Below are positions 36,081 to 52,651 of a stretch of DNA of 64,000 nt, one piece after another. The DNA lies in the IMG/VR virus record IMGVR_UViG_3300017917_001123, positions 186,001 through 250,000 of that record; one strand, 5' to 3'. How positions within the stretch are numbered: position 1 is the first letter of the stretch; every line of letters starts with the position of its first letter. Below the pieces are notes generated by a model. The model worked only from the letters and a program-made list of their open reading frames with translations. It searched no databases and was not told where the DNA came from. A program made the translations under genes and the position numbers.

Positions 36081-36169
36081 AAAATACCTTTCTGTGTGTG
36101 TTTAAAAAGTTAACAGCAATCTCTTACTGTTTTAATAGTATAGCACCAAAATGCCCAAAAGTCAACCCC

Positions 36170-36908: not shown

Positions 36909-36989
36909 TTATGAGCTCCTTTTGTTTCAGTGTGTATGTATTATATGACCAATTTACCAGTTTGTCAACCAACCCTACAGCCTGTAGGG

Positions 36990-37352: not shown

Positions 37353-37409
37353 TTCTTGCTCCTTTTCCTAACTGTCTAGCCTATAGTATAACACCGGTTT
37401 TACCACTTG

Positions 37410-38142: not shown

Positions 38143-38238
38143 TTCTGCTCCTGCTTGTTTAGTGTATGTGTGTAGTATAACACAAATGGTTTTACCTGTC
38201 AACCCCTTTTATAAAAGCCCTTTCGGGCTGTAGGGTTA

Positions 38239-38388
38239 TTAGGCAGGTACTACTTTAATAAGCATAAAACTGTTTAGGCTGTTAAGTTCCTGATGGAACG
38301 CGGCTACAGCTTGTTTACGTGTGCAAGGGCGTGTTAGGGCTGTATGCACTTGGTTTTTGTAGTAGTAATGTATAACGTATTGTTTCAT
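38239..38388 (-). CDS. 49 aa basic early protein (not in ORF track)
   Basis: Manual translation MKQYVIHYYYKNQVHTALTRPCTRKQAVAAFHQELNSLNSFMLIKVVPA. Own promoter and AGGAG. Confidence 0.7.
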   Translation of the reverse strand: MKQYVIHYYYKNQVHTALTRPCTRKQAVAAFHQELNSLNSFMLIKVVPA

Positions 38389-38438
38389 GGTCGCTCCTTT
38401 AGTGTATGTGTGTAGTATAACACACTTTTACCAAAGTG

Positions 38439-38660
38439 TCAACCCCAAGCGTTATATAACCCTATAGCGCATACGGATATAGCTACAACGTTAACAATGA
38501 ACTGTGGCTTATTTGCCACACGTATAGTCCATGTCAAGTACAGTAGCCCGCCTAGCAAACCAAACAGGGGGTCCAACTTTAGCTCCCTGTAAAAGTTCAT
38601 CAACACGTACATTGCCAAGATGCAGGCAGTGCCTGCCCACTGTAGTACTGTATTAAGCAT
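38439..38660 (-). CDS. Small three-TM membrane protein
   Basis: Hydrophobic. ATG overlaps the upstream stop. Confidence 0.7.
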   Translation of the reverse strand: MLNTVLQWAGTACILAMYVLMNFYRELKLDPLFGLLGGLLYLTWTIRVANKPQFIVNVVAISVCAIGLYNAWG

Positions 38661-38832
38661 TGTCAAATTCCATTACGTCACAACGCAAGTCGTCTACAAT
38701 GTCCTCAATCCTATTGTGCGTCTCATAGCACACGTCACTGTCACCCAGCACCTCTTGTATTAATGCGTCCGCATCCTCTAGCAAATCTATTGCCTCACGC
38801 AGTTTAGCTGCCTTTTGTTTTGCTGTTAACAT
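38653..38832 (-). CDS. 59 aa acidic helical early protein (not in ORF track)
   Basis: Manual translation MLTAKQKAAKLREAIDLLEDADALIQEVLGDSDVCYETHNRIEDIVDDLRCDVMEFDNA. Own promoter and AGGAG. Confidence 0.75.
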   Translation of the reverse strand: MLTAKQKAAKLREAIDLLEDADALIQEVLGDSDVCYETHNRIEDIVDDLRCDVMEFDNA

Positions 38833-38917
38833 GTTCGCTCCTTGTTGTTTAGTGTATGTGTGTAGTATAGCACAGTTTTACCACTTTGTCAACTGTGCTA
38901 TACAATAACCCTATGCT

Positions 38918-39283
38918 TTAGTCAACTACGTGCACGTCAGCAAAACTAGCATAGCCAAACTTAGCTTCCCAGCTAGCAATAAAGTCTCTGCCTACGTCTA
39001 AGCTAACAAAGTCATCACCCTGCATGCCCTGCTCGCTATAGCACAAGTCTACAACAAGCCCATGCTCTGTAATAAACTGCATTAAGTCTATTTTAAATTG
39101 TTTGTCTGTGTAAATTAGCCCGTCTTTATAAACGTCCCAAGTGTCTGTGTTAAAAAACACACGCAGTTCCCCATACTCCTTGTCCTCGCTAACAAAGCCC
39201 AAGCGCATGTCTGTAATCTCTACAGCTTTTTGCACGTTGCTCCAGTAGCCATCGCCGCTAGTGTTAAAAATAACTTTTTGCAT
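38918..39283 (-). CDS. Acidic early protein, 121 aa, proline-free
   Basis: TSGDGYWS...GLIYTD...YSEQGMQGDDFVSLDV. Own promoter and RBS. Confidence 0.8.
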   Translation of the reverse strand: MQKVIFNTSGDGYWSNVQKAVEITDMRLGFVSEDKEYGELRVFFNTDTWDVYKDGLIYTDKQFKIDLMQFITEHGLVVDLCYSEQGMQGDDFVSLDVGRDFIASWEAKFGYASFADVHVVD

Positions 39284-39382
39284 TTGTTTGCTCCTTGCAG
39301 TGTTTAAGTGTGTAGTATAGCACCAATTTACCACTTTGTCAACTACTACGTAAAAAAACCCTACGCAGGGTAGGGCTATTGT

Positions 39383-39655
39383 TTAAATGTTAGCTATAAC
39401 ACGAACGTATTGGAATCCGGCGCAACGGGTAGCAAAATTGCGTACAGAACCCGAACGCTTTACAGGGTTTTTAATTGTACTACGCAAAAAGTTATACAAT
39501 ACATCGGCGGAACTGGCATTGTTTAAAACAAAAGTAACACTACGACGCGGATTACTAGTGTTTGCTTTTGTTTTAAGCGTACGGTCGGTATATGTACGTA
39601 CATAGTTTACATTTGCTGCACGTGCTACAGCGCGGACTTGTTTAGTGCTTAACAT
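39383..39655 (-). CDS. Basic early protein, 90 aa, glutamate-free
   Basis: Own promoter and AGGAG. Confidence 0.7.
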   Translation of the reverse strand: MLSTKQVRAVARAANVNYVRTYTDRTLKTKANTSNPRRSVTFVLNNASSADVLYNFLRSTIKNPVKRSGSVRNFATRCAGFQYVRVIANI

Positions 39656-39703
39656 ACTTGCTCCTTTAGTGTCTGTGTAGTATAGCACCAATTTACCAGT
39701 TTG

Positions 39704-40228
39704 TCAAGTCTTTTTGTAAAAAATATGCTGTCCAATCTGTTGTATTTTCACAACACTCCTTGACCAAATAGGTTCTTTAATGTAGTCCGCATGATAGAAG
39801 GTACTATGTTCCAACCCTGCTACCCTATAGCCCTCCTGGAGCACCTTGTGAGCAACCTCCTTGCTTTCTGCCCACAAAGGCCCTTTAGGTTGAGCATAGC
39901 GTTTCTTCTTGTCCAATGTCCAGCTGAACTGAGCCCGAGCATAGACAACCTTACATATATCAGTACCCCAGCGTTTCTCCTTTAGTCGATTGAGTGTTAC
40001 CTGTGCGACAGCAAACTTACCTAACCGGTCCTCCACACCGGCTTCATAGAAAATGTTCTTGGCCAAACAGTCTGCTTCAGCAGAAGTATGCTGAACACGC
40101 TGTTGAGTCTTGATCAAATAGATCTTGATCTCTTGTATGTCATCGTGAAGGGTAGAGATCTCCAGTTGCTGGAACGCCAGGATGGCGAACATGGCCACCC
40201 CAGCTAGGATCTTCCATATGCCGTTCAC
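39704..40228 (-). CDS. Cell wall hydrolase (SleB/Hydrolase_2 family)
   Basis: CLAKNIFYEAG, AVAQVTLNR, ICKVVY..AQFSW, IGQHIFY. N-terminal TM segment. Confidence 0.9.
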   Translation of the reverse strand: MNGIWKILAGVAMFAILAFQQLEISTLHDDIQEIKIYLIKTQQRVQHTSAEADCLAKNIFYEAGVEDRLGKFAVAQVTLNRLKEKRWGTDICKVVYARAQFSWTLDKKKRYAQPKGPLWAESKEVAHKVLQEGYRVAGLEHSTFYHADYIKEPIWSRSVVKIQQIGQHIFYKKT

Positions 40229-40851
40229 TTGTGTGGCTCCAAGTTGTTCTTCTCTACACCGTCCTTATACCAGTCGGTGAGTTCCTCGTCCTCTTCGTCC
40301 TCATACTCGGCCATAGACTCGGAGATGCCATACTCATCATCCAGTTCGTCGCCAACGACATCACGCACGGTTTTAGAAGTCTCACCGCCGAACTCAATAC
40401 ACTCGTCACTGCCGTTATACCAACGACCTACATAGGCCATGCCTGGTTCGTAGTAGGTAGCCTCTACTTCAAAGCCGTCATCTACTAGGGCCTCGTAGAT
40501 GCCTACGGGCGGGGCCCACGCAGAGTCAAAGCCGAACTCAATGGTGTTGTTCTCAATCTTTATATCAGGGTCGTAGGCATCAACATCCCACTTGGTGCCC
40601 CAATGATTCACGCAGAAGTCATACCAGTTGGCCACACCATATTTGGCAATGTTCTCGGCACTCCGGCGCTCGAGCTCAATCTGGTCCGGATTCGTTTCGT
40701 CACCAACTCGACCTGCTACAATGTTCAGGTCCTCTGGAATCGGAACCACATGCTTACAGAAGTTGCCTTCCTTAATGGCCTCAACGAGGGCTTCAAGTTT
40801 CTGGGTATCTTCGTGGCTGATTACCACACGGTTGTTGCACCAATTAGGCAT
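40225..40851 (-). CDS. DUF1281/YubB-like ferredoxin-fold protein
   Basis: MPNWCNN, WYDFCVNHWGTKWD, FDSAWAPP, YYEPG motifs. Confidence 0.8.
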   Translation of the reverse strand: MPNWCNNRVVISHEDTQKLEALVEAIKEGNFCKHVVPIPEDLNIVAGRVGDETNPDQIELERRSAENIAKYGVANWYDFCVNHWGTKWDVDAYDPDIKIENNTIEFGFDSAWAPPVGIYEALVDDGFEVEATYYEPGMAYVGRWYNGSDECIEFGGETSKTVRDVVGDELDDEYGISESMAEYEDEEDEELTDWYKDGVEKNNLEPHK

Positions 40852-40861
40852 AGTAGGCTCC

Positions 40862-41125
40862 TTAGTTGAATTCGTAGAAAGTGACGCTAGGATCGATGCT
40901 TTGGAGTTCTTGAGCACAACGGCGCAGGAACTGGGCACGGGCACGGACTTGGCTTGCGGGCAGTTCGCCATCGCAGGTAAGGTTCTCTGGGCTAAGATCC
41001 GCATCCAGCGAATCCGCAATCTTTTGACGGTCCTGGGCGTTGAGCAGGCTGAGCTCCTTGCCGTTGAAAATTTTGGACCAGCTGTTTTTCATTTCAACAT
41101 AGGTTTCCAAGTTCTGAATATTCAT
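40862..41125 (-). CDS. Early hypothetical protein
   Basis: LSPENLTCDGE motif. Own promoter and RBS. Confidence 0.75.
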   Translation of the reverse strand: MNIQNLETYVEMKNSWSKIFNGKELSLLNAQDRQKIADSLDADLSPENLTCDGELPASQVRARAQFLRRCAQELQSIDPSVTFYEFN

Positions 41126-41182
41126 TTTCGCTCCTGTTTCGTTAGTGTCTAGTGTATAGTATAACATCGGTTTTACCGGATG

Positions 41183-41377
41183 TCAACCCCTTTTGGTAAC
41201 TTTTTTAACTAATACGAAAGTACGACCACGCAAATCGAACTTCAAAGGCTTATTGAACACCTTGTGCTCGTTGGTGTCTTTTTTGACATAGGCTAGGCAC
41301 TTGTCCCCGTCTAGGAGGTACAGGTGGTTACAGTCCGACCCGTCCTCCCAAACTGTAGTCTCACGCATCCACTTCAT
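41183..41377 (-). CDS. Early hypothetical protein
   Basis: ETTVW...NHLYLL...FDLRGRTF. Confidence 0.7.
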   Translation of the reverse strand: MKWMRETTVWEDGSDCNHLYLLDGDKCLAYVKKDTNEHKVFNKPLKFDLRGRTFVLVKKVTKRG

Positions 41378-41631
41378 TACATGCTCCAGTAGGCTTCTGA
41401 GCTGGGCGAGCAATAGCGCGGAGTGTCATAGCGTTCCTTATACTCAGCACCGCCCATCAAGTTCTTGCGAGTTACATAAGTTTCGTGGATTTCGCGAATG
41501 TATCCTGGGCGAACTGGGTTGGCTCGCTCCACAGCCGCCAGCGTCATGTCCGCAAAGTCCGTCTTGGACACCAGCTTCATGCCCTCTTTGCATCGCTTGT
41601 CCAACTTATAAATTTCTACGGTATATTCCAT
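41377..41631 (-). CDS. Early hypothetical protein
   Basis: Ends DTPRYCSPSSEAYWSM. Own promoter. Confidence 0.75.
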   Translation of the reverse strand: MEYTVEIYKLDKRCKEGMKLVSKTDFADMTLAAVERANPVRPGYIREIHETYVTRKNLMGGAEYKERYDTPRYCSPSSEAYWSM

Positions 41632-41755
41632 GTCGCTCTCCTTAGTGTCTAGTGTATAGTATAACACAGGTTTTACCACTTGTCAACCAAAAAAAGAGGG
41701 TGTTGCTTTTATACAACACCCCCATAAAGGGCCTGCGTTGCACAGGCCGGAGCAA

Positions 41756-42103
41756 TTAATCCAATCGGCTACCTGCGTAGGCTTCCACGCCCAACATCTG
41801 CTTCAGGAACTCTGCGGCCGCCTCGGCACCCGCTTCCAAAGTGTCCACGTTCTGGACGCCCAAACCACTGGGGTTCCACAGCTGAAGTCCACCACCGTAA
41901 GCAGGACGGAAACCTGCCTCCTTCAGTGCCATACCCAGTTTGGTGTTGCCACGAACCTTGTAGACCGTAACCCAAGCAAAGCCACAGGCGTATTGGTCAC
42001 GTCCGCCCAGCTTCTCCTGGAAGAACTTGGTTGCCGCTTGACGGGCTTCCTGCTTGGCACCCTCAACAAAACTCAGAACCTGCTCTTTAGTGAATCCACT
42101 CAT
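41756..42103 (-). CDS. Early hypothetical protein
   Basis: ACGFAWV...AYAGSRLD. Own promoter. Confidence 0.75.
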   Translation of the reverse strand: MSGFTKEQVLSFVEGAKQEARQAATKFFQEKLGGRDQYACGFAWVTVYKVRGNTKLGMALKEAGFRPAYGGGLQLWNPSGLGVQNVDTLEAGAEAAAEFLKQMLGVEAYAGSRLD

Positions 42104-42160
42104 CTTTCGCTCCTTTAGTTAACTATCTAGCCTATAGTATAGCACCGGTTTTACCTTTTG

Positions 42161-42859
42161 TCAACCGACAATTGGAATAACCCTACGAACGAATCCGGTA
42201 TTGTCCTTCTTAGCACGGCCCTTGGCTTTCAACCCAGCGATAACACCCTTAGGGTCCAAAAAGCGCAGGTCAGTGTCATCAGCATTGAAAACAGGGCGGC
42301 CCATGTAAGCTTCGGGCAGTTTATCAAAGACCATAGCCACGTTCATGCCCTGCGCCACAGCCTTAGCCACGTCCGCATCGTTACCGTCTGCGGCACTGAA
42401 GGTCAAGTGGTAGTTCTTAAGGTGCGACACTTTGCGGCCCAGGACCTTAGTGTAGTCATAGAACTGTACTTCCGGAAACTTCTCAATGATACCGTACTTC
42501 TCCCAGCTCAAGTCCGATGTACCATTCAAGCGGAACACGGGCGTCAAACCCAACTTCGCGGCCTGCTTGATGCCCAGTTTAATGTCTGCTTCCAAGTCCT
42601 TCATGAAAGCATCGCGGTTCTCAAAGAAGTACTTGGTCTTGCGGATGCGAGCCTGCTGGATCACGTTGGTGTTCTCACCTTTGCGGAACATGCCGCCACG
42701 ACCGGCAGTATTAAGGCAAGCGGCTGTACAACCTGCGGTGCGCTTAGGGCATACTTCTTTGCCCGACAAGTCAGCAGGAGCAAGGTGTAGGATGTAGCTC
42801 AGGTAACCCAGCTTCGTACCCTTCTGGATCTTAGGATTTGCAGTGCTCAATAGTTTCAT
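42161..42859 (-). CDS. GP88-family radical-SAM-like protein
   Basis: CPKRTAGCTAAC (Cx6Cx3C), FRLNGTSD, QFYDYTK, YHLTFS motifs. Confidence 0.75.
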   Translation of the reverse strand: MKLLSTANPKIQKGTKLGYLSYILHLAPADLSGKEVCPKRTAGCTAACLNTAGRGGMFRKGENTNVIQQARIRKTKYFFENRDAFMKDLEADIKLGIKQAAKLGLTPVFRLNGTSDLSWEKYGIIEKFPEVQFYDYTKVLGRKVSHLKNYHLTFSAADGNDADVAKAVAQGMNVAMVFDKLPEAYMGRPVFNADDTDLRFLDPKGVIAGLKAKGRAKKDNTGFVRRVIPIVG

Positions 42860-42930
42860 CTCTTGCTCCTTATTAATGTTTCTAGTCTCTAGTATAACAC
42901 CGGTTTTACCACTTGTCAACCAATACCCGT

Positions 42931-43269
42931 TCAATCTCCACGGGTATCTGTATTCAGCATGGGCTTCAACTTGCGGCGGAGTTCCACTTCCAAGTCGTGT
43001 CCTGCCTGCTTGCCACGTGCCGTGCCCAGAACGCGAACACCTATTTCAGTCTTGTCGTTGAGCTCACGCAGGGCCACGCAAAGGAGCCAATTCTTGCTTT
43101 CAGTCTTTGCGCGATAGAAATGCTTGGCTGCACGTGTCCGTGCGCTCTTAAGAGCTGTGGACTCTGTTTTGGCTGTGACACCAACATAAGTCATGCCGTT
43201 GACCGTAAGCTCATAGACTACATGAGTACGATCTGCACGCTTTTTACGGGGACGCTTTTCTAAGTTCAT
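42931..43269 (-). CDS. GIY-YIG-like protein (leaderless start)
   Basis: VVYEL..NGMTYVGVT...R...E...LN. ATG 6 nt after the -10. Confidence 0.6.
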   Translation of the reverse strand: MNLEKRPRKKRADRTHVVYELTVNGMTYVGVTAKTESTALKSARTRAAKHFYRAKTESKNWLLCVALRELNDKTEIGVRVLGTARGKQAGHDLEVELRRKLKPMLNTDTRGD

Positions 43270-43350
43270 GAGTGTAGTATAACACGGTTTTACCACTCTG
43301 TCAACCCCTAAAGAATACCCGAGTGGGCCGTAGGGTTTCAGAAATTCCGG

Positions 43351-43379
43351 TTGACATTCGGTAAAACCTGTGCTATACT
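43351..43379 (+). promoter_or_regulatory. Divergent plus-strand copy of the early promoter
   Basis: TTGACA-ttcGGTAAAacctgtgc-TATACT. Confidence 0.85.
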
Positions 43380-43513
43380 GTAGGCACAATGAGAGATAAG
43401 AAGAAAGCCATAAGGGCACGAGGGTTCGAACAGACTTGCTGGGGATGGACGGCGAGGGCCACCCCCCTATTTGGCTCGGTGATGAAAATATAGTAGGCTG
43501 CTCAAAATAGCCG

Positions 43514-43546
43514 CAAAAAAACCCTAGGCCAAATACCTCCTAGGGT
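43514..43546 (-). terminator. Minus-strand terminator
   Basis: ACCCTAGG-10nt-CCTAGGGT followed by a U run on the minus strand. Confidence 0.8.
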
Positions 43547-43781
43547 CTCCCTGCCCGGGTCTACCGCAACGTGACTCCGAACCGTTTGCGCTCAGTCTAC
43601 TCTAGGCCCAGGGCCTTCGACTCTAGCACAGTGACTTCTGTGGCAATTCACAGCACCTAAGGTCTGTACTGTTACCAGTATTCTTTCACGCTAGGCGTTT
43701 AACCGCATTATCAGTCTAGAGCAATTCCGTCACCTTAGTCATCGGCCGAATTGTTAACTGTTTCGTGTGCTGTTACGGCAC
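43514..43781 (-). ncRNA. Candidate structured non-coding RNA (~265 nt) downstream of tRNA
   Basis: No minus-strand ORF of note. Bounded by a TAAGTA box and a terminator. Multiple 6-7 bp complementary segments. Confidence 0.5.
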
Positions 43782-43802
43782 AAAATACTTAGCTCTGCCC
43801 GG

Positions 43803-43879
43803 TGGTGGGCCCAACAGGACTCGAACCTGTGACCAAGCGATTATGAGTCGCCTGCTCTAACCAACTGAGCTATAGGCCC
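43803..43879 (-). tRNA. tRNA-Ile2 (CAT, lysidine type)
   Basis: GGGCCTATAGCTCAGTTGGTTAGAGCAGGCGACTCATAATCGCTTGGTCACAGGTTCGAGTCCTGTTGGGCCCACCA. Cloverleaf with encoded CCA. Anticodon arm matches E. coli ileX as recalled. Confidence 0.9.
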
Positions 43880-43902
43880 CCGGGATTAATATTATACAGG
43901 AT

Positions 43903-44853
43903 TTACTTCCTTAATCCTAGTGCGGCCTGTAGCTTTTGGGCGGCATTCATAGTATTAGCAGTCTGCCCGTAGGGTGTATATGTTTGTCCCGCACCTGTGC
44001 CGTTGGGTTTTTCTGCTGATCCTAGGGCCTGTGCAGCGGGGTCACCAGTGGCCTGTGCAGCGGGGTTGGGTATGCCCGTGTCTACAAGCGATCTAACCTG
44101 TACACCTTCTGGATCCGCAATGTCTACGAAGGTCCAGTTGCCCAACAGCACAGGATTACCATCTACACGACGATTCCACTTACGCATATAGTACTTGTCT
44201 GCAGCGGGGTTCAGCCCGAGCTGGTCTACAAGGTTAGCAAACACAGAGTCGATCAGGATCATTGTCTCCGCACCTTCTAGAACTCGTAACCAATCGAATA
44301 CGGAATAACCTTCTAGCTCCCGCAACTCAATACATTGTACACCCGGTTCAACAATGGACAGATCAATGTCATAGCTCATATCACTAGCATGACCCTGATA
44401 TACCATATAGCGTTCTTGTGTGACTACACTATTATACAGTGATTTTTCTGCAGCGGGGTCCCGGTCTATACACTCGGCCAACTCCCACTTGTGACTAAAT
44501 GGTACTTCCGCTTGAGCATACTTGTATTGATCGAACTTAAACTGGGCAAAGTGACTCTTATTAGTACGCTCTGGATGACTACTCAAATACTGATACAACC
44601 ACAATTCCTCAGTTACTCCAATAGCGGTCAACTGCTTGTGCGGATTCTCATAAAAGAAAGCGCCATATTCATCTACGGGCACTGACATCCAACGAACCCA
44701 GGGAGCCGCTCGAACCATTTGTTGATAAAAGGGTTCACATACGGGCCAATATACTTCGTAGCCTCTACGTGTATATTCCTTAGCGATAGGTAGAGCAATG
44801 ATGATATCACCAAGTCCTCTACTCTGAATAAAACCAATTCTTTGTTGTGACAT
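43903..44853 (-). CDS. GT9-like glycosyltransferase
   Basis: SRGLGDIIIALP, DWLRVLEGAETMILIDSVFANL motifs. Confidence 0.7.
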   Translation of the reverse strand: MSQQRIGFIQSRGLGDIIIALPIAKEYTRRGYEVYWPVCEPFYQQMVRAAPWVRWMSVPVDEYGAFFYENPHKQLTAIGVTEELWLYQYLSSHPERTNKSHFAQFKFDQYKYAQAEVPFSHKWELAECIDRDPAAEKSLYNSVVTQERYMVYQGHASDMSYDIDLSIVEPGVQCIELRELEGYSVFDWLRVLEGAETMILIDSVFANLVDQLGLNPAADKYYMRKWNRRVDGNPVLLGNWTFVDIADPEGVQVRSLVDTGIPNPAAQATGDPAAQALGSAEKPNGTGAGQTYTPYGQTANTMNAAQKLQAALGLRK

Positions 44854-45083
44854 TTAAAGATCCTTATACGTGTGCAGCGGGGTCCCTACTATTAACATTC
44901 TGTAGGGTTCTGTAGACAATACTTACCACCCCATCCATCTGGCGCACGTATATACTGACGCGGACCATCACGCTCTAAGCAGTAGTCACGACCATAACAA
45001 CCTCGAGTAGTGATACAACCACTCAGTGATACCATAGCAAATATCACGATCAAAGATCTGCATGCATGCAAGAACAGCGGGGT
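44032..45083 (+). repeat. Same-strand dispersed motif TGCAGCGGGGT (5 exact copies, 1 partial)
   Basis: Copies at ~44032, 44056, 44200, 44449, 44873. CAGCGGGGT at 45075. Confidence 0.85.
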
Positions 45084-45098
45084 ATTAGCTTTCAACAT
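44892..45098 (-). CDS. Small putative lipoprotein
   Basis: Hydrophobic stretch plus LSGC lipobox. Confidence 0.55.
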   Translation of the reverse strand: MLKANTPLFLHACRSLIVIFAMVSLSGCITTRGCYGRDYCLERDGPRQYIRAPDGWGGKYCLQNPTEC

Positions 45099-45222
45099 AT
45101 ACTAAGAGATCTCCGTACTGTGACCGAGCTATAACAAGCGCATCATTATATGATTCAGCCAGTACGCCCACTCTAGTAGTGCCCCCGAACTGACTCTTTA
45201 CTGTAGCTGTGTATGTTTTCAT
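45085..45222 (-). CDS. Small early protein
   Basis: 45 aa behind the promoter at 45232-45260. Confidence 0.6.
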   Translation of the reverse strand: MKTYTATVKSQFGGTTRVGVLAESYNDALVIARSQYGDLLVYVES

Positions 45223-45267
45223 AGTGTATATAGTATAGCACCACCGCATGGTTTTGTCAATGATCAA

Positions 45268-45380
45268 TGGTAAAAACGGTGGAAAAAGGTGGTGAAAATG
45301 GTGGGGAAAGGTGGTAAAATTCAGGGATTTTGGGGCAGTTTTTGTGGCTTTTCAGCGATTTTTAGGCTAAAAAATTTTGG
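45268..45380 (+). repeat. Five ~10-12 bp GGTGG(T)AAAA-like units followed by phased T tracts
   Basis: tggtaaaaac ggtggaaaaa ggtggtgaaaat ggtggggaaa ggtggtaaaat. Confidence 0.75.
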
Positions 45381-45480
45381 ATCAGGGTGGGGGTGACAGG
45401 CATTACTGCAATACTTTCTACTGTTTTTCACAGTTTCCTGACTGTATTACCAGGCCCCCTAGAGCCTAATACCATTGTGC

Positions 45481-45741
45481 TTACACGTAGTAAGTGCCCA
45501 TGATGTTCTCTACACAGTTGCTGAACTGTAGTAGGAATAGTGTTTGAAGTTTGCTGTTAGTAGGTAATTCCACTACCCACGCTATGTTTGAGTATGTTAT
45601 TCGTGTCTTATAGCAGTCCACTCCGATCTGCTGACAGTATAGAAAAATGTCATCTAGTCTACTGTTGATTCTGTATAGAGTGGTTTTTCTGACGGAAGTG
45701 CTTGAGTTTGTTTTTGACATGGACACGTACAGCAGAGTCAT
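45481..45741 (-). CDS. Hypothetical protein (start uncertain)
   Basis: ORF ending TLFLLQFS... Confidence 0.5.
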   Translation of the reverse strand: MTLLYVSMSKTNSSTSVRKTTLYRINSRLDDIFLYCQQIGVDCYKTRITYSNIAWVVELPTNSKLQTLFLLQFSNCVENIMGTYYV

Positions 45742-46090
45742 TACGCATAAGATCTACTATAACACCTATTAAGAACCCGACCATCCACGCATAGGCCAGA
45801 GCACGTACACGGTACTTCTTATTGGTAATTGTGCACATTTCCTGCCATAACCATTCGTGTTCCGGGTCTTTATATACGGGCTGGTTCATCTGTTTAATTG
45901 TGCTTTACATATAGCACGTATTTGCCCCAACGCTCTTTGGCCATCATTTGTGCTTCTAGATAGCTACTGGCTTCCACTGTCTGCGTCCAGTTTTGTGTGG
46001 GCTGTGCTGGATTGTTTAGGACTACTGTATAAGTCATTGGTCTGCTCCAAAATGCTTGTATATGCTATTTAGTGGTGGTTAAATATCCGC

Positions 46091-46563: not shown

Positions 46564-47193
46564 ATGAGTTTTAATGGTAATCCAAATATTGAACAGCATC
46601 GTCTAAAGCCCCAGGGCGAACGCTACTACTATTCTAGTACTGAGTGGTTTTTTAACCTACAGGATCTAGATCGTTTGCGGGGTCTAGTGGGGCAGTTAGA
46701 AGCTGGTACTGTTCGCGCCTCGCATGAGCCGCAGAGTGTACAGCCTGAACTTAGATCTAGTATGGTTTCGTTTATCGAACCTACTGCGGATTCTGGTTGG
46801 CTATACGAAAAGATTGGGGAAGCTATACGTTTCCATAATCAGACCTACTATGGCTACGATATCACGGGTATTGAGCATCTACAGTTTACCGAATACCCTG
46901 CGGGCGAAGGCTTCTATAAGCCGCATATGGACTGGGGTTCTGGTATGGTTATGGGCCGCGGCGATCTTTGCCGTAAGCTATCCTTTAGCATACAGTTATC
47001 TAATCCTGATAGCTACGAAGGTGGCGACTTCCGTATTCTTAATGGGCAGGACTTTACGCAACAAAGTGAAAAATTACGGCAGTTTGGTACTATCGTTGTA
47101 TTCCCTAGCTGGATCCTACACGAAGTTACTCCTGTAACACGGGGTACTCGTCGAAGCCTAGTTGGCTGGTGTGTGGGTCCGGATTTCCGTTAA
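46564..47193 (+). CDS. 2OG-Fe(II) oxygenase (prolyl-hydroxylase/PiuC-like)
   Basis: HMD, RKLSFSIQL, YEGG, HEVTPVTRGTRRSLVGW motifs. Confidence 0.92.
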   Translation: MSFNGNPNIEQHRLKPQGERYYYSSTEWFFNLQDLDRLRGLVGQLEAGTVRASHEPQSVQPELRSSMVSFIEPTADSGWLYEKIGEAIRFHNQTYYGYDITGIEHLQFTEYPAGEGFYKPHMDWGSGMVMGRGDLCRKLSFSIQLSNPDSYEGGDFRILNGQDFTQQSEKLRQFGTIVVFPSWILHEVTPVTRGTRRSLVGWCVGPDFR

Positions 47194-47265
47194 AATTTTG
47201 TCTACCCCGATTTTTCTTTTGCAAGCCGCTTCGCGGAAGAGGGTTGGGTATAACGGAGTGGTAAA

Positions 47266-47823
47266 TTGACCCTGAAAATTGCTCAAAGCCTATTTGATCT
47301 TGTAGAAGGTTCTGTGCTAGAGCTGGGCTCGCATGACGGGTCGTGGTTTACCCAGTATCTAGTTGATCGTGCTGGTAGTGTCTGCTGTATAGAGCTAGAT
47401 GGTATTGCCCTAGCCCGTGTACGTGAACAATGGCCTAGAGTGCGCTGTCTACAAGCAGACTTTCATCAGGCTGTTTCGGGAGTGGGTTGTTACGATAACG
47501 TAGTTCTCTTTGGTGTGTTAGGTCATACCCCCAACCCACTGGGCTTGTTAGAAGATATTGTACACTATGTCAAACCCCGGCGTATATTCCTAGAAGCAGA
47601 GCCCGGAGGTGTTGTGCGTTGCGTTAGGGAGGGTGTTAATCAACCCGGACAGCGTCAAAGTCGTAGGGCTACCTGTGGACTCAGCATACAGTTAGGCACA
47701 CGCATATATACGGATGCTCTGGCTAATTTGGGCTACAAGCCCATTAGGACTTATAGGGAGTCAGAGGGCATCAAACAAGGATTAGAATACACAGTCTATG
47801 ATCTACACACAACAAGCACGTAG
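47266..47823 (+). CDS. Class I SAM-dependent methyltransferase
   Basis: VLELGSHDG, IE, YDNVVLFGVLGH motifs. Confidence 0.75.
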   Translation: MTLKIAQSLFDLVEGSVLELGSHDGSWFTQYLVDRAGSVCCIELDGIALARVREQWPRVRCLQADFHQAVSGVGCYDNVVLFGVLGHTPNPLGLLEDIVHYVKPRRIFLEAEPGGVVRCVREGVNQPGQRQSRRATCGLSIQLGTRIYTDALANLGYKPIRTYRESEGIKQGLEYTVYDLHTTST

Positions 47824-48934
47824 CATTCCGCCCTATACAAATACCCAGGCCTACGATAAGTTTACTAGGTTGGACAATCAGCCCGTGTTTCTCTACGATG
47901 AGTTGGACAGTACCGTACACGGAGTAGAGCCCGTAGATGCTTTCAATGAGCAGGTATGGGCAGAACTAAGGGTAAATCCTGAAGCCCGACTCTTGATCAA
48001 CTTCCCCGGGGACTTTCTAAATCTACACGATATATCTAAACTAAAGCTGGCCCAAGAGCAACACTCTATACCCGCAGATCGTATCTGGGTCATAGTCATG
48101 GACGCTAACGTTGTGGACTTTGTGGAACAGCGTTGGCAGGGTGTTAGGGTCTGTGCCTATAACTTATTGTTGGCTAGAATACAGATACCACACGTTGGTA
48201 ATCCAGGCGATCAGCGTTTCAGTGTCCTGAGCCGTAACTATAGACCCTGGCGTTTAGAGTTTTACCTACATCTGCTCAAGGCAGGGGTGCTGGATCGCAC
48301 GGTCTACAGCTTTCACAACATAGACCCTTACCTTACTGGCAAAAGCATCTACACCGCAGAAGATCTCTACAACGATGCTCGCAATGCGGGCTTTGACATC
48401 AAGGACAGCCAACTTAGAAACTGGTTTGCGGGCATACCCTACGATCTACCCAACAGCAATAAGTTCAACAAACATCACAATGCTACCTACGATGCTATCC
48501 GTCGTGCGGGGGTACACCTGTTAATTGAAAGCCATTTTGATCCCTACATTTACTGGCCCAGCTACAGGCATATGGACCCTCGTGAGTTTAGCCCAGGATT
48601 CCCTACAGAAAAGACCTACAAGGCCATGGCCTGTGCTCGTCCATTTATTGCTGTGACCACACCTTACTTCTTAGAAAGTGTTAGGGCTCTGGGCTTTAAA
48701 ACATTCAGCCCTTGGATAGACGAAAGCTATGATACTATTGTAGATAACCGGGCTCGTATGCGGGCCATTGCTGATGAAGTAGCCAGACTAAACAGCCTAG
48801 ACCCAGAAGAGTTTCAGACCCTGTTCTATAATCTAAGCTCTGTAATTCTACACAATTATAATTGGGTACAAGAACTACAACGCAGAAACACCCTGCCCGA
48901 TAACTGGGCCTGGCTCAAGGAACACATAGAATGA
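47798..48934 (+). CDS. Glycosyltransferase-like protein (GT10-like C-terminus)
   Basis: IES...FPTEKTYKAM...PFI...GFKTFSPWIDESYD...HNY. Confidence 0.6.
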   Translation: MIYTQQARSIPPYTNTQAYDKFTRLDNQPVFLYDELDSTVHGVEPVDAFNEQVWAELRVNPEARLLINFPGDFLNLHDISKLKLAQEQHSIPADRIWVIVMDANVVDFVEQRWQGVRVCAYNLLLARIQIPHVGNPGDQRFSVLSRNYRPWRLEFYLHLLKAGVLDRTVYSFHNIDPYLTGKSIYTAEDLYNDARNAGFDIKDSQLRNWFAGIPYDLPNSNKFNKHHNATYDAIRRAGVHLLIESHFDPYIYWPSYRHMDPREFSPGFPTEKTYKAMACARPFIAVTTPYFLESVRALGFKTFSPWIDESYDTIVDNRARMRAIADEVARLNSLDPEEFQTLFYNLSSVILHNYNWVQELQRRNTLPDNWAWLKEHIE

Positions 48935-49683
48935 AACTAGCACAAGAGCTCTACGAATACTTTAATACCCTACACGTCAAATACCCACCCAAGGAGTATA
49001 GGGTAGATTGGCAAGAAGGTAAACCCGTACCCTACCTAGTTATAGATAACTTCTTACCTGATCATATCTACAGGGCCGCACAGGCAGAGATAAAAGATAT
49101 ACCCCCACATCAATGGACACAGTTCACACGTAGGGGTAGCCTAATGAATGAGTGTAAAAATCTAGCAGGTGCGCCCATACTACAGACCTTAACCCACTGC
49201 TTTAATAGCGGTGTGTTCTTAGATTGGCTAGAGGGCTTTACAGGCTTAGAACGTGTTATATCGGATCCACGACTTGTGGGTGCGGGCTTGAGCACATGCC
49301 AACCCGGGCATAGCCTAAAGCTACACACAGACTTTAACTGGAACGAACAGCTACATCTTAATAGGGCTATGAGCCTTATTCTATACCTAGCCCCTGAATG
49401 GGACCCTGCTTGGGGTGGGGGACTAGAGTTCTGGGACTTTGAGCGTACCCAATGTGTTAGCAAAGTGGACTGTTTGCCTAATCGCTTGTTGTTGTGGCTA
49501 TATGACGAGCGCCTAATACACGGCTACCCAGAGCCTATTCAATGCCCCCAAGGGCATCAACGTGAAAACCTGCGCTTGTTCTACTACAAGAGTAACAGCA
49601 CCCCCGAGAGCCAGCCACATCGCTCACTGTACTGGTGGGACGAGGCCCTAAAGGCCCCGTACGATGTTAGAACTGAAAAGTAA
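48931..49683 (+). CDS. 2OG-Fe(II) oxygenase (Oxy_3-like)
   Basis: LHTDFN, WGGGLEFW, NRL, HGYP...R motifs. Confidence 0.9.
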   Translation: MKLAQELYEYFNTLHVKYPPKEYRVDWQEGKPVPYLVIDNFLPDHIYRAAQAEIKDIPPHQWTQFTRRGSLMNECKNLAGAPILQTLTHCFNSGVFLDWLEGFTGLERVISDPRLVGAGLSTCQPGHSLKLHTDFNWNEQLHLNRAMSLILYLAPEWDPAWGGGLEFWDFERTQCVSKVDCLPNRLLLWLYDERLIHGYPEPIQCPQGHQRENLRLFYYKSNSTPESQPHRSLYWWDEALKAPYDVRTEK

Positions 49684-50511
49684 TTAGAATGTGCCGTTGT
49701 TAGCACGTTCCGCTAGAACAAAAGGATTATTCCATTGCTGTAGTTCTGGAATGCTCTGTACTAGATAGGGCTTGTTAAGGGCTTGAGCAATAGCACAGAC
49801 CCAACCGTTTGGTGTACAGATAGTTTGGTTCATACCACTGATCCACTGTGCTAGTTCTCCAGGGTGATCTACTTCTACGTGGCTAGTTTGAATTTTAGTT
49901 ACATTCTTGAACTCTTGATATTCGGACTTTGTGCCTACAAATACGCTGACAGCACCTACGTTCTGTTGGGCCCATTGACTGTAGACATCTCTATCTTCCC
50001 ACCCAGAACCGGCAAACACAACACCCTTGCCCTGCGGGCGTCCTGGAATAGCAGGAATGTCTAGCCAGCTGTTCATACGGATCTGTTGCCACTTGGTCCA
50101 GTGAACATGCGTTACTTTACCAAAGCGATCCATGGGATGCATGTTAAAGCGATTGTCCATGTCTATAGTATAATCAATCTTATCTAAGTCATGATCTACA
50201 ATTTCGCCTGCCCATACATTCACACTCTTAACCCACTTTTGGTTTTGTACCAATGAGCAGATAACATCAAAGTCATCTTGATTTAGACGACCCTGCCATT
50301 CCGGTGTAGCGTACTGCCCTTTGTAGTATAGGGTCTTTGGCGGAATCAACCCTAGGGCAATATAAACATGCCCACCCCCAAGTGCTTTGACATAGGCCAT
50401 TGCTTGGATTACTTCAATGGGTGTTCCAGAAATCTTAAATGTAGTTTCCCCGTAAGCGTGTTCAGGGTTGAACAAGGGGTTTGCGCTGTGATCGGTATGT
50501 TCTAGTTTCAT
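49684..50511 (-). CDS. Degenerate GT9-like protein, paralog of 28667..29494
   Basis: Shared LGGG, GRL.Q.DF, VW.GE, VFVGTK.E, ELA..I.G, AIAQ.L. Confidence 0.65.
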   Translation of the reverse strand: MKLEHTDHSANPLFNPEHAYGETTFKISGTPIEVIQAMAYVKALGGGHVYIALGLIPPKTLYYKGQYATPEWQGRLNQDDFDVICSLVQNQKWVKSVNVWAGEIVDHDLDKIDYTIDMDNRFNMHPMDRFGKVTHVHWTKWQQIRMNSWLDIPAIPGRPQGKGVVFAGSGWEDRDVYSQWAQQNVGAVSVFVGTKSEYQEFKNVTKIQTSHVEVDHPGELAQWISGMNQTICTPNGWVCAIAQALNKPYLVQSIPELQQWNNPFVLAERANNGTF

Positions 50512-50536
50512 ATGGATATTTAACTTGGTATATAAC

Positions 50537-50565
50537 TTGACAGAAAATTTTCTGCCTCGTATAAT
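50537..50565 (+). promoter_or_regulatory. Consensus sigma70 promoter
   Basis: TTGACA-17-TATAAT. Confidence 0.85.
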
Positions 50566-50600
50566 TCTAACATAACTATTATAAAGGAGTCAAACTTAAT

Positions 50601-50795
50601 ATGTTAAAACCAGGTCCAAACTACAGGATGAGCGCACAGGCAAAACGTTTTCTTGCTACCATCATCGATCCGCACAAACGTGGCGAGTTTAAACGTGCTA
50701 CTATTCAAGCAGAATTAGCCGCTCAACTTCAACCTAAGCGTGAGAAAAAACCACGTAATGGTAACTTCGTCCAAGACAGTAGCGCAGACGAATAA
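50601..50795 (+). CDS. Small basic protein
   Basis: AGGAG RBS after a consensus promoter. Confidence 0.7.
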   Translation: MLKPGPNYRMSAQAKRFLATIIDPHKRGEFKRATIQAELAAQLQPKREKKPRNGNFVQDSSADE

Positions 50796-50951
50796 AACCC
50801 GTTATAATAGAGTGAATGGCCAAAAATGACCGTTTTTGGCCTATTATTTTGCCCGATATTAAAATAGGGCACTAACTAAAACTACGCTCTTTAAATTTTT
50901 GGAGTTTACACACACTGACAGCGTAAAAATAACTTAAAGGAGGACAGCGAC

Positions 50952-51623
50952 ATGTCTAAAATACACAGAGTTTTTACTGTGCTATTAGCATTAGCGGCCC
51001 TGACCGTAACGGTACCCGGTCAAGCCGAGACCCCGACTCAAGAGGGTCAATATTTTGTAGTCTCAGAAGTTAGCGATAGACTACAATCTTTTGTATCATC
51101 GATAACACAACCTGTTATCAACGTAAAAGACCTAACATGTCTTGCTCGTAACATTTTCTTCGAAGCGGCGAATGAGCCTGAAGAAGGTAAAGTAGCAGTT
51201 GGTCTAGTCACATTGAATAGAGTACAAGACGGACGTTTTGGTAATTCTATTTGCGGTGTAGTAGATCAGCGTTCTACAAGAGTAGTCGAACGTGAGAATA
51301 CCCGTGTTGTTAAAACAGTATGGGGTACTAAGACAGAGAAGTTTACAGTCTTAGAAAAGATCACGACATGCCAATTTAGTTGGCGTTGTATGTCTACTAG
51401 AAATCCCAAACCTCATGATGAAAGATGGCTTGAAAGTCAAGAAATAGCACGAAACTTGCTTGCCAGCAAATACACCTACGAGGATTGGAGATACAAATAT
51501 GCTGAAGCTTTATATTTCCACGCAACCGGTATTCGCCCTTCTTGGGCAAAACAAAAGGAACACGTAGGTCGTATAGGCGGGCATAAATTTTACGCAGAAA
51601 AGGAGAAGCTTGTCAGTTTCTAA
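50952..51623 (+). CDS. Cell wall hydrolase (SleB/Hydrolase_2 family), second copy
   Basis: Signal peptide. CLARNIFFEA, AVGLVTLNR, CQFSW, IGGHKFY motifs. Confidence 0.9.
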   Translation: MSKIHRVFTVLLALAALTVTVPGQAETPTQEGQYFVVSEVSDRLQSFVSSITQPVINVKDLTCLARNIFFEAANEPEEGKVAVGLVTLNRVQDGRFGNSICGVVDQRSTRVVERENTRVVKTVWGTKTEKFTVLEKITTCQFSWRCMSTRNPKPHDERWLESQEIARNLLASKYTYEDWRYKYAEALYFHATGIRPSWAKQKEHVGRIGGHKFYAEKEKLVSF

Positions 51624-51634
51624 TAAATACTGAC

Positions 51635-51847
51635 ATGAGAGCACATGAATTCATTACTGAAAAAACAGACCCAAAACTTTGTCGTTCTACCAAACGTCTT
51701 GGAAGAAGCGACCAGAGTAGTTGCGTGTCTCAGGGATTACGTCCACACCATAGTGGTAAAACTTTTAGAGGTCAGCCTATCAAGCACAAAAAGATAAAAG
51801 GCTCTAAGTATGGTGGACCACTTCCCGATTATGACGGTAAAGAGTAA
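51635..51847 (+). CDS. Small basic late protein with MRAHEFITE leader
   Basis: TAAATA-N5-ATG start. Capsid-targeting-like N-terminus. Confidence 0.65.
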   Translation: MRAHEFITEKTDPKLCRSTKRLGRSDQSSCVSQGLRPHHSGKTFRGQPIKHKKIKGSKYGGPLPDYDGKE

Positions 51848-51892
51848 ACCATAAAACGTTTTTAACCACTTGGCCCCCGGCTAATTAAGATT

Positions 51893-52651
51893 ATGAAAAT
51901 AGTTTTAGTTACCGGGGGTTTCGACCCTATACACTCTGGACACATTGAATATCTTGAAGCCGCAAAGGAATTGGGCGATGAGTTAGTTGTCGGACTTAAC
52001 TCCGATGAATGGTTAGAACGTAAAAAGGGCAGAGCATTTATGCCCTTTGAAGAACGTCAAGCCATTATGCTTAGTATCAGACCAGTCAACTGGGTAATCA
52101 ACTTTGATGACGAAGACGGCTCTGCTAGATTTGCTATCCATGCGGTCCGTGAAAAGTTTCCGGATGCTACAATTATTTTTGCCAACGGCGGAGACCGCAC
52201 AGAAGATAATATTCCTGAAATGGATGTCGAAGATGACAATATTGAATTTGTATTTGGTGTTGGTGGCAAAAACAAAAAGAACTCTAGCAGTTGGATATTA
52301 GAAGAATGGAAGGCACCTAAAACAGAACGTCCTTGGGGATACTATCGTGTATTACATGAAGTACCTGGTACTAAGGTTAAAGAGTTAACAATTGAGCCTG
52401 GGCAGAGTTTGAGTATGCAACGCCATGCCGATCGAGCAGAGTTTTGGTTAGTAACAGAAGGGCAATGTGAAGTACGTCAACAGATGTCTAGTGGATACAC
52501 CATTCCGCCTGTTGTATTACAAACACACGACGGTATAGAAATATCAAAAGGCGAATGGCATCAACTAGTGAACCCTTTTAAGAAACCATGTCGCATTGTT
52601 GAAATACAATTTGGCGATCGATGTGTGGAAGAAGATATCGAGAGGAAGTAA
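51893..52651 (+). CDS. Cytidylyl/adenylyltransferase (HxGH) fused to type II phosphomannose-isomerase cupin
   Basis: GGFDPIHSGH, GLNSD, NGGDR, then ERPWG, SMQRH..RAEFW, IVEIQFG..EEDIER. Confidence 0.9.
   Translation: MKIVLVTGGFDPIHSGHIEYLEAAKELGDELVVGLNSDEWLERKKGRAFMPFEERQAIMLSIRPVNWVINFDDEDGSARFAIHAVREKFPDATIIFANGGDRTEDNIPEMDVEDDNIEFVFGVGGKNKKNSSSWILEEWKAPKTERPWGYYRVLHEVPGTKVKELTIEPGQSLSMQRHADRAEFWLVTEGQCEVRQQMSSGYTIPPVVLQTHDGIEISKGEWHQLVNPFKKPCRIVEIQFGDRCVEEDIERK

What the first reader, a model, noticed from the sequence alone, without database searches (positions are those of the whole stretch)
45262..45480. Iteron-like, intrinsically curved intergenic region at the edge of the early region
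Seen: five GGTGG/A-tract units at ~10-12 bp period, then T tracts at ~45328, 45339, 45349 and 45359, AAAAAATTTT, and strong G skew. The unit GTGGTAAAA equals the early-promoter spacer motif, here in the opposite orientation. Gene orientation switches to mostly + within ~0.7 kb. Inference: a replication origin, a pac/terminus site, or a high-avidity sink for the promoter-spacer-binding protein.
Basis: partly seen in the sequence, partly recalled or inferred. Interest (0 to 1): 0.6.

Follow-up and report, generated by a model that had tools for sequence, protein, structure and literature searches.

The report
Curved DNA upstream of first early promoter
The phased A/T-tract array is real and is the most strongly phased stretch in this 331-kb pond jumbo phage; it lies directly upstream of the first strong early promoter, so it is most likely a bent-DNA promoter element, possibly at the edge of a terminal repeat, and not a replication origin.

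Summary
Window 45262-45380 holds about ten A/T tracts spaced 10-12 bp apart. It gives the highest AA/TT helical-phase score in the whole 331,570-bp genome (25.6 against a mean of 4.0, sd 2.2; the next best is 16.8).

A consensus sigma70-type promoter, P1, abuts the array on the minus strand: -35 TTGACA at 45260-45255, a 17-bp spacer, then TG-n-TATACT at 45240-45232. P1 is the most upstream of about 20 leftward early promoters. It is the only one of 34 strong promoters in the genome with phased upstream tracts.

Eight metagenomic relatives keep the same module:
- a unique conserved distal block of about 59 nt (79% identity);
- a tract array whose sequence drifts (47% identity) while its phase relative to P1 is kept;
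- the promoter itself;
- a start codon 6-9 nt after the -10 in most copies.

Best reading (about 0.55): intrinsically curved upstream DNA that serves the first early promoter. A compatible rival (about 0.3): the module ends a long terminal repeat. Contig depth steps about 1.45-fold at 45419-45448, and phage PA5oct, the nearest cultured relative, has a 39-kb repeat rich in early genes whose left end also carries phased tracts.

An iteron origin is not supported. The units are too short, there is no easily melted element, and no initiator gene is nearby. This is a new member of a known kind, of moderate interest.

The parts
45232..45260 (-). Promoter P1. The -35 TTGACA is at 45260-45255, followed by a 17-bp spacer ending in TGc (extended -10), then the -10 TATACT at 45237-45232. 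It is the most upstream of the leftward early promoters.
   Evidence: Consensus scan gives 11 of 12 matches with TG before the -10. Genome-wide promoter list. The same promoter (TTGACT, 17 bp, TATAMT) sits at the same place in 8 relatives.
45085..45222 (-). First gene after P1, a 45-aa ORF whose ATG lies 9 nt after the -10 with no Shine-Dalgarno sequence (near-leaderless). It is followed by a small lipoprotein-like gene at 44892-45098 with an LSGC lipobox.
   Evidence: Sequence and ORFs. In most relatives the lipoprotein-like gene follows P1 directly, with its ATG 6-7 nt after the -10. No Pfam or PHROG match.
45268..45319 (.). Five GGTGG + A-tract units. Read on the promoter's sense strand they are T-tracts centred near -49, -60, -71.5, -83 and -92.5 relative to the inferred start site.
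   Evidence: Relatives have T-tracts centred at the same positions (about -50, -60, -71, -83, -93) although the sequence is only 47% identical.
45328..45363 (.). Four further tracts (T on the plus strand, A on the promoter's sense strand) centred near -104 to -136. They stay in phase with the proximal tracts. This roughly 32-bp (about 3-turn) stretch is extra in this genome compared with most relatives.
   Evidence: Distance from distal block to -35 is 137 bp here, against 105 bp in 5 relatives and 116-118 bp in 3.
45366..45418 (-). Conserved distal block. On the minus strand it reads GAAAGTA (45418-45412), a 16-nt box that is invariant in all copies (GCCTGTCACCCCCACC, 45401-45386), 7 nt, then CAAAATTTTTTAGC (45379-45366, the A/T junction tract). 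The box is single-copy in the genome.
   Evidence: The box has no second copy in the genome with up to 3 mismatches, apart from one 3-mismatch chance hit. Mean pairwise identity among 8 relatives is 79%, against 32% for the 100 nt beyond it. Exact pattern scans of the viral and metagenome collections returned only this clade plus 2 chance hits.
45419..45448 (.). Junction at which three things change in the probable source pond metagenome. Conservation among relatives ends, a minor strain variant starts to diverge, and contig k-mer depth drops from about 150 on the early-gene side to about 103.
   Evidence: table 8: records 2+3 = 148.5 and record 4 = 151.3 on the left; records 5+6 = 102.4 and record 7 = 103.8 (a contig 8,038 nt long, of which 2,109 nt lie on the stretch laid) on the right. 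One search gives the conservation edge.

Best explanation
The finding is the upstream control region of P1, the first and outermost early promoter of the phage. P1 is a consensus host-type (sigma70-like) promoter on the minus strand. About ten A/T tracts, one per helical turn from about -45 to -140, make the DNA upstream of its -35 strongly and planarly bent.

Inferred mechanism: the bend, together with the narrow minor grooves of the tracts, helps host RNA polymerase capture and wrap the upstream DNA. Alpha-subunit C-terminal domains would contact the T-run at -52 to -47. This would make P1 the promoter that fires first on the entering genome. The bent array may also act as a fixed-phase spacer. 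It would hold the conserved, single-copy distal block, which is probably a protein-binding site, on a set helical face 10, 11 or 13 turns from the promoter.

Shown here: the anatomy, the genome-wide uniqueness of the phasing, and its conservation in relatives. Inferred: the polymerase contacts, activation itself, and any factor binding at the distal block.
For: - P1 begins 8 bp from the array.
- The array is the top phased region of the whole genome. It ranks first or fifth by the two wedge-model curvature estimates.
- Of 34 strong promoters, only P1 has phased upstream tracts: amplitude 15.5 against a background of 3.1, sd 1.7, with a maximum of 11.6 in 5,000 random sites.
- In 8 relatives whose neighbouring 316-aa protein is 61-75% identical, the homologous intergenic region is again the top phased region of each locus.
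- Tract centres recur at about -50, -60, -71, -83 and -93.
- The tract phase relative to P1 is nearly identical across relatives (resultant length 0.98-0.99), while the array sequence is only 47% identical. Drifting sequence with retained phase is the pattern a structural constraint would leave, not a sequence constraint.
- The block-to-promoter distance takes the values 105, 116-118 and 137 bp, which is about 10, 11 and 13 turns.
- Precedent: the phasing of upstream A-tracts relative to the -35 sets the strength of a Bacillus phage promoter (McAllister and Achberger 1989, as cited in PMC9825172). From my own knowledge: Aiyar, Gourse and Ross 1998 on A-tracts acting through the alpha subunit.
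Against: - P1's core is already consensus, and the other early promoters (about 20) do without any curved upstream DNA. The need for an activator is therefore not obvious.
- The match to the E. coli UP-element consensus is weak: 6-9 of 14 positions against 5.0, sd 1.8, for random sequence.
- The array reaches about -140, beyond the usual reach of alpha-subunit contacts.
- Length changes in whole turns could arise from slippage between roughly 11-bp units without any selection.
- The relatives share ancestry, so phase conservation is not fully independent evidence.
- No transcript data exist; no RNA run holds this sequence.
- The host is unknown.
Confidence: 0.55

Rival explanations
1. Terminal-repeat boundary or packaging end. 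This is compatible with the best explanation. The early region would be a long direct terminal repeat, and the module would be its outer end. The conserved single-copy block would be the site where terminase recognises or cuts the DNA, or where an end-binding protein sits. P1 would lie about 170-190 bp from the physical end and point inward, so that it is the first promoter to enter the cell.
For: - PA5oct is the nearest cultured relative (TerL 50% identical). It has a 39,080-bp terminal repeat with 105 genes, many of them highly transcribed early (PMC7318152; annotated in MK797984).
- PA5oct's early genes start about 400 bp from its left physical end. That end carries phased A/T tracts in the top 0.02-0.3% of its genome.
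- In the probable source metagenome, contig depth is about 150 on the early-gene side and about 103 on the other. The change falls at 45419-45448.
- The depth polarity, the edge of conservation and the onset of strain variation all coincide within about 30 bp.
- The block is single-copy in the genome and invariant in all relatives.
Against: - The depth ratio is 1.45-1.5, not 2. It comes from contig-level k-mer depth only; raw reads were not available, so no read-end pile-up could be sought.
- A third co-occurring strain of depth about 45, identical on the left and different on the right, fits the same numbers. The DNA just right of the block is a known hot spot of gene insertion among relatives.
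- No ORF of this genome has a homologue in the PA5oct repeat.
- No contig of any relative ends at the site.
- The other boundary of the putative repeat was not found.
Confidence: 0.3
2. Operator, nucleation site or sink for a protein that recognises the GGTAAAA(CC) motif. That motif sits at a fixed place in the spacer of most early promoters, where a bound protein would repress. It recurs inverted in the array, most constantly as a unit at -55 to -43 of P1, where a bound protein could activate or nucleate a larger complex. The nearest comparison is a histone-like or early-shut-off protein.
For: - GTGGTAAAA is about 10-fold enriched in the window.
- GGTAAA lies 3-4 nt after the -35 in about 17 of the early-type promoters listed for the genome, and likewise in relatives.
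- The tract unit nearest the promoter (CCGTTTTTTACCA or close variants) is the best-kept unit of the array in 6 of 8 relatives. It is the reverse complement of the spacer motif.
Against: - No candidate binding protein was identified.
- Relatives keep only 1-2 such units. The regular five-unit array is peculiar to this genome.
- The shared string is largely 'GGT + A-tract'. It could simply be how this clade builds an A-tract.
- The array's sequence is poorly conserved (47%) while its phase is kept. That favours structure over sequence-specific binding.
Confidence: 0.1
3. Replication origin. Iteron-like repeats would bind an initiator, curvature would help assemble the complex, and transcription from P1 might help open the DNA.
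For: - The repeats are directly repeated and phased, and the region is curved, as at the lambda origin.
- There is a local minimum of cumulative GC skew at genome position 231,201.
- A strong promoter is adjacent. Some phage origins, such as those of T4 and T7, are promoter-dependent (from my own knowledge).
Against: - The units are 10-12 bp. A 22-bp period has only 2.4 copies.
- The unit sequence is not conserved in relatives.
- There is no easily melted element: 6-34% of genome windows are at least as AT-rich, and 15% are less stable.
- No initiator or other replication gene is adjacent. The DnaB-like helicase lies about 21 kb away.
- The skew minimum coincides with the strand switch, as every other skew dip in this genome does.
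Confidence: 0.05

Closest known systems
Intrinsically curved (phased A-tract) DNA upstream of strong promoters. Examples: the Alu156 promoter of Bacillus phage SP82 (McAllister and Achberger 1989, cited in PMC9825172) and the Clostridium perfringens plc promoter (from my own knowledge).
   Same: Several A/T tracts, one per helical turn, start just upstream of the -35 of a host-type promoter. The rotational phase relative to the promoter is fixed. One of the known examples is also a phage early promoter.
   Different: There are about ten tracts here, reaching about -140, against 3-5 in the classic cases. A conserved, sequence-specific distal block follows the array. The promoter core is already consensus. 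No activity data exist.
UP element of E. coli rrnB P1 and A-tract UP mimics (Ross 1993; Estrem 1998; Aiyar 1998; from my own knowledge).
   Same: A T-run on the non-template strand at about -52 to -47, where the distal UP subsite has its T-run. It is positioned for contact with the alpha-subunit C-terminal domain.
   Different: Only 6-9 of 14 consensus positions match. The region from -59 to -38 is only 55-68% A+T. Membership is therefore not shown.
Ends of long direct terminal repeats carrying early genes: PA5oct (39 kb, PMC7318152), and T5 and SPO1 (from my own knowledge). In T7, short-repeat arrays sit beside the terminal repeat, ahead of promoters A1-A3 (from my own knowledge).
   Same: A block of small early genes with many strong host-type promoters is read inward from one edge. 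Phased or short repeats lie next to that edge; PA5oct's left end also has phased tracts. A depth step falls at the edge.
   Different: The terminus is not demonstrated here. The depth ratio is 1.45, not 2. There is no homology to genes in PA5oct's repeat.
Iteron-type origins such as lambda ori (four 19-bp repeats, intrinsic bend, AT-rich region; from my own knowledge).
   Same: Directly repeated units and intrinsic curvature.
   Different: The units are half as long and are not conserved. There is no AT-rich unwinding element and no initiator gene at the site.

Membership tests
Curved-DNA upstream promoter elements | Three or more A/T tracts spaced about 10-11 bp apart, immediately upstream of the -35 of a sigma70-type promoter | tested here: met
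   About ten tracts with spacings of 9.5-12 bp run from -49 to -136. The array begins 8 bp from the TTGACA.
Curved-DNA upstream promoter elements | Predicted or measured intrinsic curvature well above the genome background | tested here: met
   The phasor score ranks first of the genome. The wedge models rank it first and fifth (parameters recalled from memory). Gel anomaly was not testable.
Curved-DNA upstream promoter elements | Fixed rotational phase between the bend and the promoter | tested here: met
   The phase is nearly identical in 9 homologous copies (R = 0.98-0.99) despite 47% sequence identity and length classes of 72, 83-85 and 104 bp. Caveat: the copies share ancestry.
Curved-DNA upstream promoter elements | Stimulation of transcription that depends on the bend and its phase | not testable with these tools
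   This needs reporter or in-vitro transcription assays. No RNA run holds the sequence.
UP element (alpha-CTD site) | Match to the consensus at -59 to -38 | tested here: not met
   Only 6-9 of 14 specified positions match, against a random mean of 5.0, sd 1.8. Only the T-run at -52 to -47 fits (consensus recalled from memory).
Iteron replication origin | Several 17-22-bp direct repeats conserved as initiator binding sites | tested here: not met
   The units are 10-12 bp. The 22-bp period has 2.4 copies. Unit sequence is not conserved in relatives.
Iteron replication origin | Adjacent AT-rich DNA-unwinding element | tested here: not met
   The highest A+T content is 72% over 40 bp, and 6% of genome windows are as rich or richer. 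Nearest-neighbour stability is unremarkable.
Iteron replication origin | Initiator or other replication gene at or beside the repeats | tested here: not met
   The neighbouring ORFs have no Pfam or PHROG replication match. The helicases lie 21-30 kb away.
Long direct terminal repeat boundary | Two-fold coverage plateau ending at the site | tested here: inconclusive
   A depth step of about 1.45-fold at 45419-45448, from contig k-mer depth only. A third strain could also explain it.
Long direct terminal repeat boundary | Pile-up of read or molecule ends at a fixed base | not testable with these tools
   Only Logan contigs were available for the runs that hold the sequence.
Long direct terminal repeat boundary | Terminase related to that of a phage with proven long terminal repeats | tested here: met
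   The best cultured match for TerL is PA5oct and its close kin, at 50% identity over 97% of the protein. PA5oct's repeat is documented. This is weak evidence at that distance.

The most novel reading that the evidence does not exclude
The module would be the physical end of the genome. The invariant single-copy block at 45386-45418 would be the site that defines the end of a long terminal repeat in this clade of PA5oct-related jumbo phages, through terminase recognition or cleavage or through end-protein binding. The strongly bent array would couple that end to the first early promoter. Host polymerase would then load within about 200 bp of the entering DNA tip, start a leaderless message, and perhaps help draw the genome in.
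Probability: 0.25. Interest if true: 0.6.

Novelty: new member of a known kind. Interest (0 to 1): 0.4.

Why it matters
How jumbo phages of the PA5oct lineage start their programme on the host polymerase is poorly known, and so is how their long terminal repeats are delimited. This locus offers a compact, conserved cis-module of about 190 bp: a distal block, a bent spacer, a consensus promoter and a near-leaderless first gene. It can be tested directly with reporter fusions, gel-shift assays and read-end mapping. If the only function is upstream curvature, it is a clean natural example of a known principle. If it also marks the end of the repeat, it would identify the first end-defining sequence for this group.

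Tried and rejected
- Megablast and blastn of the region against cultured phages found no match.
- tblastn of the 316-aa and 152-aa neighbours against cultured phages found no match.
- A 14-nt box search in the viral contigs gave mostly chance hits; 5 were real.
- An array-specific 32-mer had no other holder.
- The lipoprotein gene returned the same five contigs.
- Rfam found nothing in the finding. The only match nearby is the tRNA at 43803-43879.
- An RNA fold of the 266 nt upstream of the block gave z = -0.97, so no structured RNA or clear terminator.
- The search for an unwinding element was negative.
- A second copy of the box that could mark another repeat boundary was not found.
- Homology between this genome's early region and PA5oct's terminal repeat was not found.
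- A sigma70-type rightward promoter inside the distal block was considered. Its GTGACA has no -10 at a usable spacing, so I rejected it by eye.
- Fis and IHF sites were considered by eye and rejected, because the consensus C or WATCAA is missing.
- GC skew was considered as an origin signal and rejected, because it tracks gene strand throughout the genome.
- The second most phased regions of the genome were examined as candidates for the other repeat boundary. They lie in or beside ordinary genes.

Full report
WHAT THE GENOME IS

The window is positions 186,001-250,000 of a 331,570-bp IMG/VR virus record, classed as linear and about 93% complete. It encodes a tail sheath, a large terminase, helicases and a DnaB-like helicase, so it is a jumbo myovirus. 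The best cultured match for the terminase is Pseudomonas phage PA5oct and its close kin, at 50% identity. Long blocks are syntenic with PA5oct. The only run holding the sequence nearly in full is a pond metagenome, which is probably the source of the contig.

THE OBSERVATION

- Five purine-block + A-tract units lie between 45268 and 45319.
- T-tracts start at 45328, 45339, 45349 and 45359.
- AAAAAATTTT lies at 45369-45378.
- There are 50 G against 10 C in 45262-45400.
- The 9-mer shared with the promoter spacers is ten-fold enriched in the window. The copy in the array lies on the opposite strand to the promoter copies.

The phasing is not a chance feature. A 120-bp AA/TT phasor at period 10.5-11 puts this stretch first in the whole genome (25.6 against a mean of 4.0, sd 2.2; the next best is 16.8). 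Two wedge models, with parameters recalled from memory, rank it first and fifth for predicted curvature.

On the minus strand there is a consensus promoter, here called P1. It has TTGACA at 45260-45255, a 17-bp spacer ending in TG-n, and TATACT at 45237-45232. It starts 8 bp from the array.

Genome-wide, P1 is the outermost of about 20 near-perfect minus-strand promoters packed into genome positions 218.6-231.3 kb, the early region. Read in the promoter's sense, the array is a series of tracts centred at about -49, -60, -71.5, -83 and -92.5 (T-tracts), then -104 to -136 (A-tracts).

Among 34 strong promoters in the genome, only P1 has such an upstream region. Its amplitude is 15.5, the others score 1-8, and the background is 3.1, sd 1.7.

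P1 also differs from the other early promoters in two further ways. They share a GGTAAA(ACC) spacer motif at a fixed offset and a conserved leader with a Shine-Dalgarno sequence. P1 instead has its ATG 9 nt after the -10.

RELATIVES

The neighbouring 316-aa gene and exact pattern scans recovered eight distinct related loci from lake and pond metagenomes. All of them carry the same module in the same order.

1. A distal block that includes a 16-nt box invariant in all copies and an A4T6 junction tract. This 59-nt block is 79% identical on average. The 100 nt beyond it are 32% identical, which is effectively unalignable.
2. A tract array that is only 47% identical in sequence. Even so, it is the top phased region of every locus, and its phase relative to the promoter is essentially unchanged (R = 0.98-0.99).
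3. The promoter TTGACT, 17 bp, TATAMT.
4. In most copies, a small lipoprotein-like gene whose ATG lies 6-7 nt after the -10.

The block-to-promoter distance is 105 bp in 5 relatives, 116-118 bp in 3, and 137 bp in the window. That is about 10, 11 and 13 helical turns.

Drifting sequence with retained phase points to a structural role for the array. The invariant box, which is single-copy in the genome, points to a sequence-specific role for the distal block. One caveat applies: length changes in whole turns could arise from slippage between roughly 11-bp units.

In several relatives the module lies in a divergent intergenic region, opposite a zinc-ribbon-like gene. In the window, two small minus-strand genes have been inserted between them.

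MOST LIKELY MECHANISM

The best-supported reading is bent upstream DNA serving the first early promoter. The idea that upstream A-tracts and their rotational setting control promoter strength is established, including for a phage early promoter (cited in PMC9825172). What I infer, and have not shown, is that host polymerase uses the tracts and the bend to bind and wrap. The bend may also present whatever binds the distal block to the promoter.

Several points count against a simple activator.
- The promoter core is already consensus.
- The other early promoters lack any such element.
- The match to the UP consensus is weak.
- The array extends well beyond the reach of alpha-subunit contacts.

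THE TERMINUS READING

PA5oct has a 39,080-bp direct terminal repeat with 105 genes, many of them highly transcribed early (PMC7318152; annotated in the GenBank record). Its first rightward genes start about 400 bp from the left physical end. That end carries phased tracts in the top 0.02-0.3% of its genome.

In the pond run, Logan contigs give a depth of about 150 to the left of 45419-45448 (140.6 + 7.9, and 151.3). To the right the depth is about 103 (97.2 + 5.2, and 103.8 for a contig 8,038 nt long, of which 2,109 nt lie on the stretch laid). The side with higher depth is the early-gene side. The step coincides, within about 30 bp, with the edge of conservation and with the point where a minor variant diverges.

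This is what the end of a terminal repeat would look like if packaged DNA were diluted by replicating DNA. However, a third strain that is identical on the left and different on the right fits the same numbers. The ratio is not 2, and raw reads were not available. I therefore hold this reading at about 0.3. It is compatible with the promoter reading rather than opposed to it.

OTHER READINGS

An iteron origin fails three of its defining features: repeat length and conservation, an unwinding element, and an adjacent initiator. The skew minimum simply follows gene strand.

A sink or operator for a protein that binds GGTAAAA remains possible. The best-kept tract unit, at -55 to -43, is the inverse of the spacer motif. 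There is no protein candidate, and relatives keep only one or two such units.

COMPARISON AND NOVELTY

Functionally the array resembles the classic curved-DNA promoter elements. It meets the structural criteria that could be tested here. It does not qualify as a consensus UP element or as an iteron origin. Membership in the class of terminal-repeat ends is undecided.

I rate it a new member of a known kind. It is made more interesting by its extreme degree of phasing, the conserved distal block, the near-leaderless first gene and the possible link to a genome end.

LIMITS

- The host is unknown, and there are no transcript data and no raw reads.
- The single read-laying run used 5,001 letters.

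Noticed in passing
window 32,600-45,300 (minus strand); also L002, L004-L006 and L135: About 20 near-identical early promoter cassettes. Each has TTGACA, a spacer with GGTAAA(ACC) 3-4 nt after the -35, TG-n-TATACT, then a conserved leader (ACACTTAAACACTAAAGGAGC-like). Many are preceded by short hairpin terminators. The cassette is conserved in relatives, and copies may cause the assembly breaks seen in the relatives' contigs.
   Followed up: partly
window 43803-43879 (-): A tRNA-Met (CAT) gene sits inside the early transcription unit. It attracts contigs of many other organisms in the read-laying, which explains the depth spike there.
   Followed up: yes
window 43276-43304 (-) and 43351-43379 (+): Two perfect promoters stand back to back, 47 bp apart. 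The plus-strand one points into a minus-strand gene region with no plus-strand ORF of 40 aa or more after it, so it may drive an antisense or short transcript. The minus-strand one has its ATG 6 nt after the -10 (MNLEK...), and this leaderless-like arrangement is kept in relatives.
   Followed up: no
window 45085-45222 (-) and 45894-46037 (-); L002 5261-5407: Paralogous genes of 45 and 47 aa flank the curved module (pairwise E = 4e-5). In L002 the single homologue lies upstream of the module, not downstream. The gene has therefore moved across the module during evolution.
   Followed up: partly
window 45449-45921: A hot spot of variation lies just outside the conserved block. A minor variant in the pond run (depth about 5) replaces 45513-45813 with 287 other letters. 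Relatives carry different small genes, or none, at this place.
   Followed up: partly
window 46564-61921: The block of mainly plus-strand genes to the right of the finding is rich in modifying enzymes. It holds two 2OG-Fe(II) oxygenases, a SAM methyltransferase and four radical-SAM proteins. PA5oct is reported to carry a modified G (bioRxiv 10.1101/2025.03.31.646159). If this phage modifies G in GG or GA contexts, the G-rich array and box would be densely modified.
   Followed up: no
PA5oct MK797984 1-260 and 39,081-39,250 (loci L140, L141): PA5oct's repeat boundaries carry short repeat arrays of their own. There are three copies of a roughly 30-bp unit (AAAATTTTGGAAAT...TTGCTNTATAGG) at the left end. 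There are tandem GTCTATAGGTTC-like units just outside the right boundary, which is itself preceded by GGTGGGTGGTGG.
   Followed up: partly
window 44892-45098 (-) and homologues in L004-L006, L135: The first or second gene after P1 encodes a small lipoprotein-like protein with a signal peptide, a lipobox and a Cys-rich tail conserved as DGPRQYIRAPDGWGGKYC. By analogy with T5 Llp or the Cor proteins it could be an immediate-early superinfection-exclusion factor. It has no family match.
   Followed up: partly
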